Positions 16,933-21,780 of a stretch of DNA of 64,000 bases are shown here, piece by piece. The translations under genes were made by a program, and so were the position numbers. Source of the DNA: Dimorphilus gyrociliatus (Eukaryota; Animalia; Annelida); NCBI GenBank assembly GCA_904063045.1, contig CAJFCJ010000024.1:434001-498000 (forward strand), read 5' to 3'. How positions within the stretch are numbered: the first letter of the stretch is position 1; each line of letters opens with the position of its first letter. The notes below the pieces were generated by a model, which saw only the letters and a program-made list of their open reading frames with translations, ran no database searches and was not told the DNA's origin.

Positions 16933-19592
16933 CTGCAGAATTAATGAATGCAAACAGCGTCCAGTAAATTATGATTAAAGAAAGTAGAGTAAAGAGCGAA
17001 ATGAGATGCTTTTACTATAGGTGGTCTTTCCGTCATTATACTCAGGGAGTATCCTTAAAAAAAGACGACGCTCTGTTTAAAGATTTTTTTTTCGAATAGG
17101 TATGTTCTATGTGAAATAACTTCAGATACCCTAGAGAATTCAATATAGAATTTTTCAATAGTAAAAAATACCTAACGATTCACAAAAGGGCTGTTCAATT
17201 CGATACTGGACATAGTTAATACTTAAATTAAAAAGAGCCTTTATTTTCTTCCCATATTTTTTCTTCTACTCGGATGAATAACAACTATTTTGTAAAAAAG
17301 TTATCTATGAGAAAAACGAGCTAATAATTCTCATATTCTCAATGACTGACAGTTATTAGTATACTAACAAAGAACTGCTGTATAATATTTTGAAAAAAAT
17401 TCAAAGAAAACCTAAAAATGAGAGATTTTCAATTATTCCAAGTACAGTAAACAGACGTGTATAAATGTTTTTAAACGAAAATTTGTATACAATCAGCCTG
17501 AACAGGCGAATTAATTTATCGAAAACAAGAAAGGAACCTGTTCTTTGACCCATTGGAAAATACCCAAAATTTGAAAGCGAAGACAAAAGAACACTGGTTA
17601 TAGTTAACAAGACAGATATATAAATAGCAGTGCCACGATAAACCCTCTGTTTTGTTTTACTACCTTTTGAATAGCCCGGAAAAACTGTTACGATAATGAA
17701 GAATGAAAAATTAGAGCCATTAACAACTATCACAATTAATAAAAGTTAATTAATATAACATATTATAGCTGTTCCGTTAACTTAGAATGCTTGTTTAAAG
17801 CGCTATTGTTTTGATGGACAACACATGATGTTTTCGCAATAAAAGTACATTATTTTTATTAAATAGAAAAACCATAGGTATCTTATTAGCAATATAACAG
17901 TCTTGTTATTATTACCATTATAATATTATAAATAGCTCTTTAAGAAGCCTAAATCTTCTTTTTTAAATATTCTAACAAACATTCTTTATGATATTGTTAA
18001 AATGATTATTTATAAAGGGACTATTAATGGATAATTTACAAAGCACTCTCGGATAAATGATTTAATTATCAAAAGAATATCTATACCTGAGAAAATTTTT
18101 CAATCTTATAACGCAGCCATCTTTCAAAACTGTTTTAATATCATCTATATCTTTATTTTCTTCAATTGCTACCATCCTTGGCCAAGTATTACTACTTTCT
18201 AATCCCTGACAGTCAATTTCTTGACTGTCAATATTGAGTTCTTCTCCTTGTTTCAATATATGCAGTTCAGATTCTTCGAAAAGATATGAGGTTCTCTTTC
18301 TTACTTTGTTTGGCATGTTGCATTCAACAGGTCGTTTGAAACAGTCAGTTCTACTCTGGACAGCCATTCATGTAGATTCATTAACCTTGGTAACACATGT
18401 TTTTTGTCAGATCCCACTAATGCAACAATAAACTTTAAATTTCAGCTTTTGTATGCTGCATTGATAGCTAAAATTATCATGCGCCCCACATTCGATATTC
18501 AGTGTTTTTACTATAATTACGCTGTAATATTCGTCTGGTGTTGACAATAATTTCAACAACACATGAAAGAGGCCAAGAATATCGATCTTAATAAATGGAC
18601 AACTTTCAAAGAGATTATTATATGCAAGAATGTAATTCCTAGTTAACCAAAATATCCAATAAGAGTAGACTGTCCCAAATATTGAGATCAGGTGAGGTGA
18701 AATAGATATTTCTCAACTGAAAGATAAGATGCTCTACGGTTTTTTTTTGTCTCCAATAATCAGTTAAAAGAAGGTGTAAGGCTTATTTTAAGCAGCAGAA
18801 TATCAACTTATATAATAACCTTTGAATTGTTACTGATTGTGTAAATACTACACTCGCTCCATCTATTGAAAAAGGTTTCAAAAAATTTCAAGCTTTTTGC
18901 AGAAGGTTTTTTAAAGTTTGAATATATTAGTATGTATAGGCATATACGCAAAAATGCATCTTGAAATACCTTTTACCATGCAAATATATCTAATTTTCAT
19001 AATATAAACCATATGAGACCTAATTCTTACACTTTGGATTGAACCTGTCCCACTTTTGAACTTAGAAAATTTTGCTTCGAGTAATTACAACATACTATAC
19101 AGCATACTGTAAAGTACATGTACAGTTTATTTATATAATAAATTTTTATCTTACCCGCAAAGATGGAGACTTTCGTTTCTATTATATCTTGAGTCCCAAC
19201 AATTTGCTTTGAAACTATTTCTCATTGCTGCAGATGAATCGAGTATATCAGATTCTGAGATGCTTCTACTGGTTGATTCCCTTGTAGGACGAACATCTTT
19301 GTGGTGGTCATTTTCAAAGGAATTATCAGCGAATTTTACACAGTTATTCGGCTTTGATTTTAATCCTTTACTGTTACAGTTAATCATCGTGGGTTGGAAT
19401 TCTTCGATGGAATGATAATATCTTGATGATTCGAAACCAAAAATGAGATGATTAAGAGAATTAGAGTTGCATCATCTATGATACTCGTTCTCTGATTTGA
19501 TAAACCGTAAAATCCATTATTAAATACATCCTGATTGCAATAATATGATTTGTCATAATTGGAAAGTAAGCAGTATAAATGATAAACTTTAA

Positions 19593-19612: not shown

Positions 19613-19679
19613 TTACATAGTACAATTCGAATCGGAAAAATTACTCCAAGGTTAAGGTGAAGGTTCTTTAAAGGACAAA

Positions 19680-20946
19680 ATGGCGTTATCAACACTTCGG
19701 TGAGATATTTTTTCAATGATTTTCAATGATAAGTCCCTTTAAAATATTCGTTTTTTAATTTAGAAGGCTTTAAAAATTATAAAAAATAAAAATTTATATT
19801 TGATTTTCAAAATTGTGTAATAATCTTATTATTATCTGGGTTTTTTCAGTGCTGCAAGATGTTCTTCTCTTTTCTTAAAGCAGAGCTCCTTCCTGATGAA
19901 GAAGTAAATAGTTTTTTTCATATTCACAATTGTCTCTTTTTCTATTTAAACGTAGTAATGATGCATAGTAAGAATTATCTTAAAATTATATTTTCTTAAC
20001 CTTAATATGCAAATGAGTTGTGAAGCAACTTTCTCCTTGCCATTTATGAAGGATATATAAAGGATAGCAGTACTATATATGCATAGGTTTGGCGTAAAAG
20101 CTCGCATCAGAGGTCACAGACAGGTACTTGTTACCTAATAAAGGCCTGTGGGAAGGTCTGAGAAGGCCGATTTCTAGGCTCTAGAAGGGTCCCAACTGTA
20201 AAGTTGGGTGAGGGAACCAGAAAATGACCGGCTGGACGCGAATATGACGCGAGACGTCTAATCCCCCTGAAAAGGGATAGACGGATGTCCGCGTTGCAGT
20301 TAGGTTGGAAGCTCTCACGGCCGGCTATGTGAGTCCGATTTGCGAGGTGAACTTGGTTCATAACTCGATTCAGACTACTCTTACGCCAACCTTTTTTTTT
20401 TAAATTTTTTGTTCAACTTTTAAGTATTTTTGTTTCCCCAGCTCTGCTGCTCCGATGGCTCTATCTGCACACGATCAAATGAAAGAGTTTTGGAAAAAAA
20501 ATGAAAAGTTAAATAGACCATCATCACCATGGATTATCTATTGGCCACATTTACCCATGATGACATCTCTCGGTCATAGAACTACTGGGATTGTTTTAGG
20601 AACTGGCTTGTATGGAATTTCCATCGGTGTATTTTTAGCACCTGGTGATTTTAACTCAATAATACAAGGTATTCAATCGTTGGAAATAGCAGCACCAATT
20701 ATGTGCGCTCTCAAATCAATTGTTGCTTTTCCTTTGGTTTACCATTACATAAATGGGTTAAGACATTTGGTTAGTAAAATTAAATATGCAATTATGCAAT
20801 CAAAATCTTTATTAATATATAAATATTAACAGTCTTGGGACGCTGGATATGGATTTAAACTTAACACGCAATACAAAACTGGAATCTTGGCATACGGATC
20901 AGCAGCAGCTATTGCTCTTCTTTTGGGGTCTCTATCCTACTGGTGA
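19680..20946 (+). CDS. SDHC: Succinate dehydrogenase cytochrome b560 subunit (171 aa)
   Basis: Exons 19680-19699, 19850-19903, 20442-20769, 20833-20946. Transit-peptide-like N-terminus, FWKKNEKLNRPSSP, GHRTTG, YHYINGLRHL|SWDAGYG. Confidence 0.93.
20007..20061 (+). promoter_or_regulatory. Putative type 3 Pol III promoter of the RNase P RNA gene
   Basis: Octamer ATGCAAAT at 20007-20014 (about -76) and TATATAAA at 20054-20061 (about -29) relative to the predicted 5' end. I could not recognise a PSE with confidence. Confidence 0.55.
20083..20392 (+). ncRNA. RPPH1: Nuclear RNase P RNA (RPR/H1), intronic in SDHC
   Basis: P1 helix AGGTTTGGCGTAA (20085-20097) pairs with TTACGCCAACCT (20381-20392). 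CR-I GGGAAGGTCTGAGA at 20150-20163. Hairpin CCCAACT-GTAA-AGTTGGG at 20191-20208. AGAAA, TTGGAA and CTCACGGCC..GTGAGT follow in the expected order. CR-V ATAACTCGATTCAGACTACTC at 20360-20380. Confidence 0.95.
20392..20401 (+). terminator. Pol III terminator (T10) of the RNase P RNA gene
   Basis: Run of 10 T starting at the last base of the P1 3' strand. Confidence 0.7.
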
Positions 20947-21780
20947 GAGAAGTGTTAACGAAGAAACCGTTTTCATTAGACTGAACGCTTGATAACATGA
21001 AAGATGATAATATTGTATTAAACTTGTATTTATAACAGAAATATTATCAAATGATCCAACAAGATAAACAAAAAGATTTGAATATTTTTGATGTTAAAAA
21101 GATGTAGTTCACTTTTTTCCCTTTTCAATTTACATATTCAATTTTTCCACAGAAATGAACACAACTTTTAATTTGAATATTCAGGCATTAGCGGTATTTT
21201 TTAAGTTTAAGTAATCACAACTGAAATGAATGAAATAGAAAATCTATTTTGATCATTCTGTTCTATATTCTATTTTTAAATAGAACAAATAATGTCCAAC
21301 TAGATATTTTGATGCTTCTTAATGAAATACTTGTAGATACGCACTCTTAAGGAATGATAATATACAAGTAAATATACAGTATATATACAGTATATAGAAA
21401 TTTATACTATAAAGTATACATAGATGATGTTTTCATAAGATTATTTTGTTAGGACAAAACAAATTTATGAATAATTAATATTCATAATTAAATTAATTAA
21501 CATAGTAGGAGATCTTTATTTAGTGAAAGCGCTCTCGAATGCCATTGAATTGAACAAACAATTAAAAGGACCGTATCCTTTGTAAGGAAATTTTCCATTG
21601 CACAACTCAAAACGGCGCCAACCATCTTGGCGCCAAAAGCAGCCGACGATCGGCACCCCAAGTCAATTAGGCTACATTGAAATCTCCATTACTTGAACAG
21701 CATCTGGCGTAAGTTGAAATCATTTTCGCTGAATAAATACAACATAATTGTATAAAATTATATATCAGATAGAGAAAAAA

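What the first reader, a model, noticed from the sequence alone, without database searches (positions are those of the whole stretch)
19904..20441. RNase P RNA gene nested in SDHC intron 2 with its own Pol III signals
Seen: the 538-nt intron is mostly one cassette in the host's sense orientation: octamer (20007), TATA (20054), a complete RNase P RNA of about 310 nt (20083-20392) and a T10 tract ending 40 nt before the 3' splice site. Established: most animals transcribe RPR as a free-standing Pol III gene; human H1 has a compact octamer/PSE/TATA promoter. Insects and crustaceans instead have RPR in introns of Pol II genes without Pol III signals, processed from the host transcript. Inference: this locus combines both states, intronic yet apparently Pol III-competent. 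It may be an independent embedding outside arthropods, or an intermediate in the Pol III-to-Pol II switch. It could couple or interfere with expression of two essential genes, tRNA maturation and complex II.
Basis: partly seen in the sequence, partly recalled or inferred. Interest (0 to 1): 0.85.

Follow-up and report, generated by a model that had tools for sequence, protein, structure and literature searches.

The report
RNase P RNA gene inside SDHC intron
In the tiny marine worm Dimorphilus gyrociliatus, the gene for the RNA core of the tRNA-trimming enzyme RNase P sits inside an intron of a respiratory-chain gene yet keeps its own conserved promoter and stop signal, so it is most likely a self-sufficient gene lodged in another gene, not one that depends on its host as in insects.

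Summary
Window 20086-20391 (+) is a complete nuclear RNase P RNA (RF00009, 159 bits, full model). It lies in the sense orientation in the 538-nt intron 2 of SDHC. The genome is Dimorphilus gyrociliatus, a miniature annelid.

Upstream lie an octamer (-79/-72), a PSE-like block (-56/-48) and TATATAAA (-32/-25). A T10 run abuts the last P1 base pair.

An unidentified close relative (Logan contigs) has the RNA in the same intron. In an otherwise about 48% identical intron, exactly these three upstream blocks are perfectly conserved (runs of 15, 9 and 17 nt; shuffle P about 2.5e-5). A T-run is kept at the same place. The RNA shows four compensatory pair changes and no broken pairs.

Capitella has the same exon structure with a 54-nt intron 2 and no RNase P RNA. 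The cassette therefore entered an ancestral intron within the dinophilid lineage, independently of insects and crustaceans.

Best reading: an independently Pol III-transcribed gene nested in a Pol II intron of a very compact genome. Dual (Pol III plus host-intron) production is possible but untested. I found no paper describing this. The public gene model wrongly starts SDHC inside the RNA gene. Interest is moderate.

The parts
20086..20391 (+). Nuclear RNase P RNA gene (about 306 nt; P1 helix 20086-20098 with 20381-20391)
   Evidence: RF00009 at 159.4 bits, full-length model, with CR-I (GGGAAGGUCUGAGA) and CR-V (AUUCAGACUACUCU) matched. Against the relative's copy there are 102 predicted pairs, 4 compensatory, 11 one-sided and 0 broken. 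There is no internal T4 run.
20004..20018 (+). Conserved block AATATGCAAATGAGT holding the octamer ATGCAAAT (20007-20014, -79 to -72). Candidate distal element (Oct-1 type site).
   Evidence: 15/15 identical in the relative, within an intron that is 48% identical outside the blocks.
20030..20038 (+). Conserved block TTTCTCCTT (-56 to -48). Candidate proximal sequence element (SNAPc site).
   Evidence: 9/9 identical in the relative and at the position expected for a PSE. Its identity as a PSE is inferred, not tested against U6/7SK/MRP promoters of this genome.
20045..20061 (+). Conserved block TATGAAGGATATATAAA holding the TATA box (TATATAAA 20054-20061, -32 to -25)
   Evidence: 17/17 identical in the relative, while the following 21 nt up to the RNA start are only 38% identical. 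The gap of 24 nt to the RNA start falls in the 21-27 nt range used for Pol III RPR genes in PMC4287351 (S2 Fig legend).
20392..20401 (+). T10 run directly after the 3' strand of P1. Candidate Pol III terminator. A second run, T6, lies at 20405-20410.
   Evidence: Read directly from the sequence. The relative has T5 at the same position, while the rest of the 3' flank is 55% identical.
19904..20441 (+). SDHC intron 2 (538 nt, GT..AG, phase 2), the host intron
   Evidence: The spliced model gives a 171-aa SDHC collinear with Capitella SDHC. Capitella has a 54-nt intron at the same position and phase. The median intron of this genome is 66 bp (PMC7854359).
19680..19699 (+). SDHC exon 1 (ATG, 20 nt)
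   Evidence: 100% identical in the relative. Same length and MALS.. start as Capitella exon 1.
19850..19903 (+). SDHC exon 2 (54 nt, presequence)
   Evidence: 81% identical in the relative with the reading frame and splice sites kept. Same 54-nt length as Capitella exon 2.
20442..20769 (+). SDHC exon 3 (Sdh_cyt domain)
   Evidence: Pfam PF01127, E 3.8e-12. 100% match to DgyrCDS13226.
20833..20947 (+). SDHC exon 4 with stop codon. Intron 3 is 20770-20832 (63 nt).
   Evidence: The model translates to the C-terminus of DgyrCDS13226 (sequence).

Best explanation
This is the functional RNase P RNA gene of Dimorphilus gyrociliatus, and it is an independent Pol III (type 3, external-promoter) transcription unit nested in the sense orientation inside ancestral intron 2 of SDHC.

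Inferred mechanism:
- An Oct-1-type factor binds the octamer at -79/-72.
- SNAPc binds the conserved block at about -56/-48.
- TBP/Brf2-type TFIIIB binds TATATAAA at -32/-25.
- Together they place Pol III at the G at about 20086.
- Pol III stops in the T10 run that directly follows P1, giving an RNA of about 306 nt with mature ends and a short U tail.

Pol II transcribing SDHC reads through the whole cassette, which is removed with the intron. The cassette, from promoter to terminator (about 400 nt), moved as DNA into a pre-existing short intron in the dinophilid lineage. That is plausible in a genome whose intergenic spacers are only a few hundred bases.

Shown: the RNA, its position, the conservation of the flanking blocks, and the ancestry of the intron. 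Inferred: which polymerase and which factors use those blocks.
For: - Full-length RF00009 match at 159 bits.
- The organism and host gene are identified.
- The same nested arrangement occurs in a second species (L001-L003, 157.6 bits).
- The RNA structure is maintained there: 4 compensatory and 11 one-sided changes, 0 broken pairs of 102.
- Footprint: upstream of the RNA the intron is 48% identical outside three perfect blocks of 15, 9 and 17 nt. These blocks contain the octamer, a PSE-positioned element and the TATA box. Two runs this long occur in 2.5e-5 of column shuffles.
- TATA-to-start spacing is 24 nt, within the 21-27 nt reported for Pol III RPR genes (PMC4287351 S2 Fig legend).
- A T-run sits immediately after P1 in both species (T10 and T5), although the rest of the 3' flank has diverged.
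- Neither RNA has an internal T4 run. The Pol II-dependent Drosophila virilis gene, by contrast, carries internal polyT stretches (PMC6797745).
- Other annelids examined have Pol III-type RPR genes (PMC4287351).
Against: - There are no expression, Pol III occupancy or end-mapping data.
- The PSE assignment rests only on position and conservation. I could not reach U6, 7SK or MRP promoters of this genome to derive its PSE consensus.
- PSE-to-TATA spacing differs by 1 nt between the two species.
- Only one relative was available, so the footprint rests on a single pairwise comparison.
- The individual motifs and T-runs are common in this AT-rich DNA.
- Absence of internal T4 is weak evidence: 35-53% of composition-matched shuffles also lack one.
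- The conserved blocks could in principle serve SDHC, for example as an intronic enhancer.
Confidence: 0.75

Rival explanations
1. Dual production. The gene is Pol III-competent, and a meaningful share of mature RNase P RNA is also released from the spliced SDHC intron by debranching and exonuclease trimming, as in Drosophila. The two essential genes would then be partly coupled.
For: The RNA is in the host's sense orientation, so every SDHC pre-mRNA carries a full copy. The trimming nucleases and protecting RNase P proteins are conserved across eukaryotes. The authors of PMC6797745 propose exactly such a transition state. SDHC is a housekeeping respiratory gene, like the insect recipient ATPsynC (PMC4287351).
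Against: No data bear on it. Strong purifying selection on promoter blocks and terminator shows that the Pol III route matters. That would be unexpected if the host route sufficed. Sense orientation has a 50% prior by chance.
Confidence: 0.15
2. Arthropod-like, host-dependent gene. The RNA is made only from the SDHC intron by Pol II, and the conserved upstream blocks serve something else, such as an SDHC intronic enhancer or processing signals.
For: Intronic and sense-oriented, the same topology as insect and crustacean RPR genes (PMC4287351). Octamer and TATA motifs also work for Pol II. About 40% of insect and crustacean genes also have some poly-T nearby.
Against: The defining feature of that class is absence of a PSE and a correctly placed TATA. 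Here a TATA 24 nt upstream and two further blocks are perfectly conserved, while the neighbouring intron is at random-level identity. The T-run abuts P1 in both species rather than lying at a variable position. There are no internal T4 runs.
Confidence: 0.05
3. Silent or secondary copy. The working RNase P RNA gene lies elsewhere in the genome, and this one is a decaying duplicate.
For: Only 64 kb of a 73.8-Mb genome could be searched. Crustaceans and some insects carry several copies (PMC4287351).
Against: Both species keep the full-length RNA at 157-159 bits. All 102 predicted pairs are intact and 4 are compensatory. The RNA is 87% identical against about 50-60% for the surrounding intron. 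The flanking signals are conserved too. This is the pattern of a gene under selection.
Confidence: 0.04

Closest known systems
Free-standing Pol III type-3 RNase P RNA genes of most animals (for example the human H1/RPPH1 compact promoter, and Capitella and Helobdella RPR)
   Same: An external promoter with octamer, PSE-positioned element and TATA within about 80 bp of the start. A T-run terminator at the mature 3' end. The same RNA family (PMC4287351). The compactness of the human H1 promoter is from my own knowledge.
   Different: Those genes are intergenic. This one lies entirely inside a protein-coding gene's intron on the same strand, about 400 nt downstream of the host's start codon.
Strigamia maritima (centipede) RNase P RNA gene
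   Same: A Pol III-type RPR with typical signals, located inside an intron of another gene (PMC4287351).
   Different: In Strigamia the gene is antisense to its host, so the host transcript cannot yield the RNA. Here it is sense, so it could.
Intron-embedded, Pol II-dependent RNase P RNA of insects and crustaceans (Drosophila ATPsynC intron)
   Same: Sense orientation in an intron of a ubiquitously needed, nuclear-encoded mitochondrial membrane protein gene (PMC4287351).
   Different: Those genes lack a PSE, a positioned TATA and a fixed terminator, and they depend on the host promoter and exonuclease trimming (PMC4287351; PMC6797745). This one retains conserved Pol III signals and arose independently in an annelid.
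Nested tRNA and snRNA genes in introns of compact genomes (Caenorhabditis)
   Same: Small RNA genes wholly contained in introns of other genes (PMC3342880).
   Different: That study does not mention RNase P (0 occurrences).

Membership tests
Nuclear RNase P RNA (Rfam RF00009) | Covariance-model score above the curated gathering threshold over the full model | tested here: met
   159.4 bits against a threshold of 28, model 1-301/301, not truncated.
Nuclear RNase P RNA (Rfam RF00009) | Conserved regions CR-I and CR-V forming P4, with P1 closing the molecule | tested here: met
   GGGAAGGUCUGAGA and AUUCAGACUACUCU align to the consensus with P4 brackets. P1 has 11 bp.
Nuclear RNase P RNA (Rfam RF00009) | Structure maintained in evolution | tested here: met
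   Against the relative: 4 compensatory pairs, 11 one-sided changes, 0 broken of 102. Only two sequences were compared.
Nuclear RNase P RNA (Rfam RF00009) | Catalytic activity and assembly with RNase P proteins | not testable with these tools
   Needs biochemistry.
Pol III type-3 (external promoter) gene | TATA box about 21-30 nt upstream of the start | tested here: met
   TATATAAA at 20054-20061, 24 nt before the first P1 base. It lies within a 17-nt block identical in the relative.
Pol III type-3 (external promoter) gene | Proximal sequence element matching the species' U6/7SK/MRP consensus at about -50 to -65 | tested here: inconclusive
   The conserved TTTCTCCTT at -56/-48 is at the right place. 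No other type-3 or snRNA gene of this genome was reachable to define the consensus.
Pol III type-3 (external promoter) gene | Distal element (octamer) | tested here: met
   Perfect ATGCAAAT at -79/-72 within a 15-nt conserved block.
Pol III type-3 (external promoter) gene | T-run terminator at the mature 3' end, and none inside the gene | tested here: met
   T10 (relative: T5) starts at the base after P1. The longest internal run is T3 in both species.
Pol III type-3 (external promoter) gene | Pol III, SNAPc and TFIIIB occupancy; 5' triphosphate transcript | not testable with these tools
   Needs ChIP or end mapping.
Pancrustacean-type intron-embedded, Pol II-dependent RPR | Located in an intron of a Pol II gene, same orientation | tested here: met
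   SDHC intron 2, + strand like the host.
Pancrustacean-type intron-embedded, Pol II-dependent RPR | Lacks a PSE, an appropriately placed TATA and a fixed terminator | tested here: not met
   All three are present, and conserved in a second species.
Pancrustacean-type intron-embedded, Pol II-dependent RPR | Expression depends on the host promoter and on splicing and trimming | not testable with these tools
   Needs reporter or knock-down experiments.
SDHC (succinate dehydrogenase cytochrome b560 subunit), the host gene | Sdh_cyt domain and collinearity with animal SDHC | tested here: met
   PF01127, E 3.8e-12. 57% identity to Capitella SDHC, with shared exon 1 and 2 lengths and shared positions of introns 1, 2 and the last intron; Capitella has one further intron inside the region matching exon 3.

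The most novel reading that the evidence does not exclude
The locus is a living example of the 'transition state' postulated for the origin of insect and crustacean intronic RNase P RNA. It would be a sense-embedded gene that still fires from its own Pol III promoter while a second stream of mature RNA is trimmed out of the spliced SDHC intron. Supply of a tRNA-processing ribozyme would then be partly tied to expression of a respiratory-chain gene.
Probability: 0.15. Interest if true: 0.7.

Novelty: new variant of a known kind. Interest (0 to 1): 0.45.

Why it matters
All non-pancrustacean animals examined so far have an RNase P RNA gene that stands apart from protein-coding transcripts or, in one centipede, lies antisense in an intron. 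This annelid locus shows that a complete Pol III cassette can enter an intron in the sense orientation and stay there across a speciation event.

That is the starting configuration from which the insect and crustacean Pol II-dependent form is thought to have evolved. The step becomes testable in a living animal for which RNA-seq, CAGE and ATAC data already exist.

It also has a practical consequence. The public gene model of SDHC begins inside the RNA gene and should be corrected, and the RNA gene should be annotated.

If the gene proves to be only an ordinary nested Pol III unit, it is a modest addition: one more consequence of genome compaction.

Tried and rejected
- Comparison with other type-3 promoters of this genome was not possible. 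Rfam found no U6, 7SK, MRP or snRNA gene in the window and ARAGORN found no tRNA. The scan's notes gave only an unverified MRP-like island in a CtBP intron on another piece, which I could not fetch.
- The PSE-like-plus-TATA-flank pattern occurs only once in the window.
- The annelid panel of the PMC4287351 S2 figure is not held as text, so the Capitella and Helobdella promoter sequences could not be compared.
- More relatives: seven further genomic contigs carrying SDHC exons, from unidentified animals, have no RNase P RNA. Some have under 750 nt upstream, so absence there is weak.
- The D. gyrociliatus exon-3 ORF is not on record in the contig index, so no transcript-level contigs were found.
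- The relative's species could not be identified. The run accessions appear in no held paper.
- No convincing target-site duplications or flanking repeats around the cassette.
- The bacterial-type promoter and terminator scan is irrelevant to a eukaryote and gave nothing.
- A retroposed origin is rejected, because an external promoter is not part of the transcript.
- A pseudogene reading is rejected on structure conservation.

Full report
**The observation**

The sequence between 19904 and 20441 begins with GTAAAT and ends with CCCCAG. Rfam places a full-length nuclear RNase P RNA (RF00009) at 20091-20387 on the + strand. It scores 159.4 bits against a gathering score of 28, covers model positions 1-301 of 301, and matches the CR-I and CR-V segments that form P4 almost letter for letter.

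The closing helix P1 can be extended to 20086-20098 paired with 20381-20391. That gives an RNA of about 306 nt.

- ATGCAAAT lies at 20007-20014.
- TATATAAA lies at 20054-20061.
- A run of ten T starts at 20392, the base after P1, and ends 40 nt before the acceptor AG.

**Organism and host gene**

The exon after the intron carries a Sdh_cyt domain (PF01127, E 3.8e-12). It is 100% identical to DgyrCDS13226 of Dimorphilus gyrociliatus. This confirms a lead from the scan's notes.

Splicing 19680-19699, 19850-19903, 20442-20769 and 20833-20947 gives a 171-residue SDHC. It starts MALSTLR and is collinear with Capitella teleta SDHC, which starts MALSVMR and has 170 aa.

Capitella has the same exon structure at this end of the gene:

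- A 20-nt first exon and a 54-nt second exon.
- An intron at exactly the same position and phase as intron 2.
- That intron is only 54 nt long.

Rfam finds no RNase P RNA within 10 kb of SDHC in Capitella or Helobdella. The intron is thus ancestral, and the RNA gene arrived in it later. This is an embedding event independent of the one in insects and crustaceans.

The published genome paper gives a median intron of 66 bp and 209 genes per Mb for this species (PMC7854359). The 538-nt intron is a strong outlier, and the cassette accounts for most of its length.

**A second species**

A protein 89% identical to exon 3 comes from Logan assemblies of three sequencing runs of an unidentified close relative. 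All three contigs carry a full-length RNase P RNA (157.6 bits) about 55 nt upstream of the same exon, on the same strand. Exons 1 and 2 are recognisable upstream, so it is the same intron.

Between the two species the RNA is 87% identical. In the RNAalifold consensus, 102 pairs are predicted. Four changed on both sides and stayed paired, eleven changed on one side and stayed paired, and none is broken. Both copies are therefore under selection as structured RNAs, which argues against a decaying duplicate.

**Phylogenetic footprint of the flanks**

This is the key result. Intron 1 and the 5' part of intron 2 are about 60% identical in the alignment, which is near what two AT-rich sequences give.

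In the 178 aligned columns between the donor site and the RNA, matches cluster into three perfect runs:

| Block | Coordinates | Position | Content |
|---|---|---|---|
| AATATGCAAATGAGT | 20004-20018 | -82 to -68 | octamer |
| TTTCTCCTT | 20030-20038 | -56 to -48 | PSE-positioned element |
| TATGAAGGATATATAAA | 20045-20061 | -41 to -25 | TATA box |

Outside these blocks identity is 48%, and the 21 nt between the TATA box and the RNA start are only 38% identical. In 200,000 shuffles of the match/mismatch columns, runs of at least 17 and at least 15 occur together in 2.5e-5 of cases.

Downstream, the relative keeps a T5 run at the same position as the T10, while the rest of the flank is 55% identical.

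The conserved pieces are exactly those expected of a type 3 Pol III promoter and terminator, at the expected distances. Manivannan et al. used a TATA box 21-27 nt upstream and a 3' poly-T as their criteria (PMC4287351, S2 Fig legend). Here the gap is 24 nt.

Neither RNA contains an internal T4 run. This fits Pol III transcription but is weak evidence, since 35-53% of shuffles also lack one. The Pol II-dependent D. virilis gene does carry internal polyT stretches (PMC6797745).

**What chance alone would give**

The motifs by themselves prove little in a 30% GC window.

- Eight octamers are present where 5.5 are expected.
- An octamer followed by a TATA motif within 25-55 nt is expected 0.19 times per 64 kb.
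- T>=4 runs occur 13 per kb.

The argument rests on conservation and position, not on motif presence.

**Most likely mechanism**

The gene is an autonomous Pol III unit. Octamer-binding and SNAPc-type factors and TBP/TFIIIB would assemble on the three blocks. Transcription would start at the G near 20086 and end in the T10 run, producing the RNA with mature termini as in other non-pancrustacean animals (PMC6797745).

SDHC transcription by Pol II passes through the cassette, and the intron is spliced out. I put this reading at about 0.75.

The polymerase and factor assignments are inferences. I could not compare the -56/-48 block with U6, 7SK or MRP promoters of this genome, because no such gene lies in the window and none could be fetched. 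The spacing between that block and the TATA block differs by one base between the species.

**Rival readings**

- **Dual production (about 0.15).** Because the RNA is in sense, each SDHC pre-mRNA contains it. The debranching, Rat1/Xrn2 and exosome pathway that matures the Drosophila RNA is universal (PMC6797745). A second, host-derived stream is therefore possible. Nothing here tests it, and the strong conservation of the Pol III signals shows that route is not dispensable.
- **Purely host-dependent, arthropod-like gene (about 0.05).** This fails the defining feature of that class, which is absence of Pol III signals.
- **Silent extra copy (about 0.04).** This is contradicted by the conservation pattern. 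It cannot be excluded without a whole-genome scan.

**Comparison with what is known**

Manivannan et al. examined two annelids, two molluscs and other animals. They found intergenic Pol III-type genes everywhere outside insects and crustaceans. The exception was the centipede Strigamia, where the Pol III-type gene lies antisense in an intron (PMC4287351).

The present case is closest to Strigamia but in the sense orientation. Its host is a housekeeping mitochondrial membrane protein gene, like the insect recipient ATPsynC.

Nested small RNA genes in introns are documented in compact nematode genomes (PMC3342880). Full-text searches found no paper linking D. gyrociliatus with an RNase P RNA gene, and none reporting an embedded RPR outside arthropods.

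I therefore class it as a new variant of a known kind. It is real and conserved, mechanistically probably ordinary, and useful as a natural analogue of the proposed first step towards the intronic form.

**A by-product**

The public protein DgyrCDS13226 starts MSALQLGWKLSRPAI. This is encoded by 20285-20328, inside the RNase P RNA, joined from a GT at 20329 to the normal acceptor. Rebuilding that model reproduces the database protein exactly.

The true exons 1 and 2 are conserved in the relative and match Capitella in sequence and length. The public model is therefore wrong at its 5' end, and its coding sequence runs through the RNA gene.

**Limits**

- Only one relative of unknown identity was available.
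- No expression or occupancy data were used.
- No genome-wide copy count was possible.
- No same-genome PSE consensus was available.

The scan's notes list no earlier report of this locus.

Noticed in passing
window 20285-20329: The public gene model DgyrCDS13226 (161 aa) takes its start codon and first 15 codons from inside the RNase P RNA (ATG 20285, donor GT 20329). It omits the true exons 1-2 (19680-19699, 19850-19903). Rebuilding that model reproduces the database protein exactly. The conserved exons match Capitella SDHC.
   Followed up: yes
window 19713-19731 (SDHC intron 1): A 19-nt block TCAATGATTTTCAATGATA (two copies of TCAATGAT) is perfectly conserved in the relative, inside an intron that is otherwise 61% identical. 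It lies 14-32 nt after the donor site. No Rfam match. Function unknown; it may be a promoter-proximal or splicing element.
   Followed up: partly
window 19645-19679 (upstream of the SDHC ATG): The leader TCCAAGGTTAAGGTGAAGGT...TTAAAGGACAAA is nearly identical in the relative. It contains three AAGGT repeats that resemble nuclear-receptor (ERR-type) half-sites, which are known regulators of respiratory-chain genes. The resemblance is from memory and untested.
   Followed up: no
window 18062-19387 (- strand): A minus-strand gene appears to start at the ATG at 19387, only 292 bp from the SDHC ATG. This is a head-to-head pair with a very short shared promoter region. The relative's contig has matching ORFs in the same order (77 aa and 94 aa in L001). 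No Pfam domain was found in the two exons tested.
   Followed up: partly
window 19879-19887 and 20440-20448: A 9-nt perfect inverted repeat (AGCAGAGCT / AGCTCTGCT) joins the end of exon 2 to the acceptor junction of intron 2. About 0.7 such matches are expected by chance in this stretch, and it is only partly kept in the relative. Probably chance.
   Followed up: partly
another piece of the same genome (scan note s1-082911): A first-stage note reports a GC-rich structured island with RNase MRP-like motifs in a CtBP intron. If real, a second type-3 Pol III RNA gene would be nested in an intron in this genome. Its upstream region would give the PSE comparison missing here.
   Followed up: no
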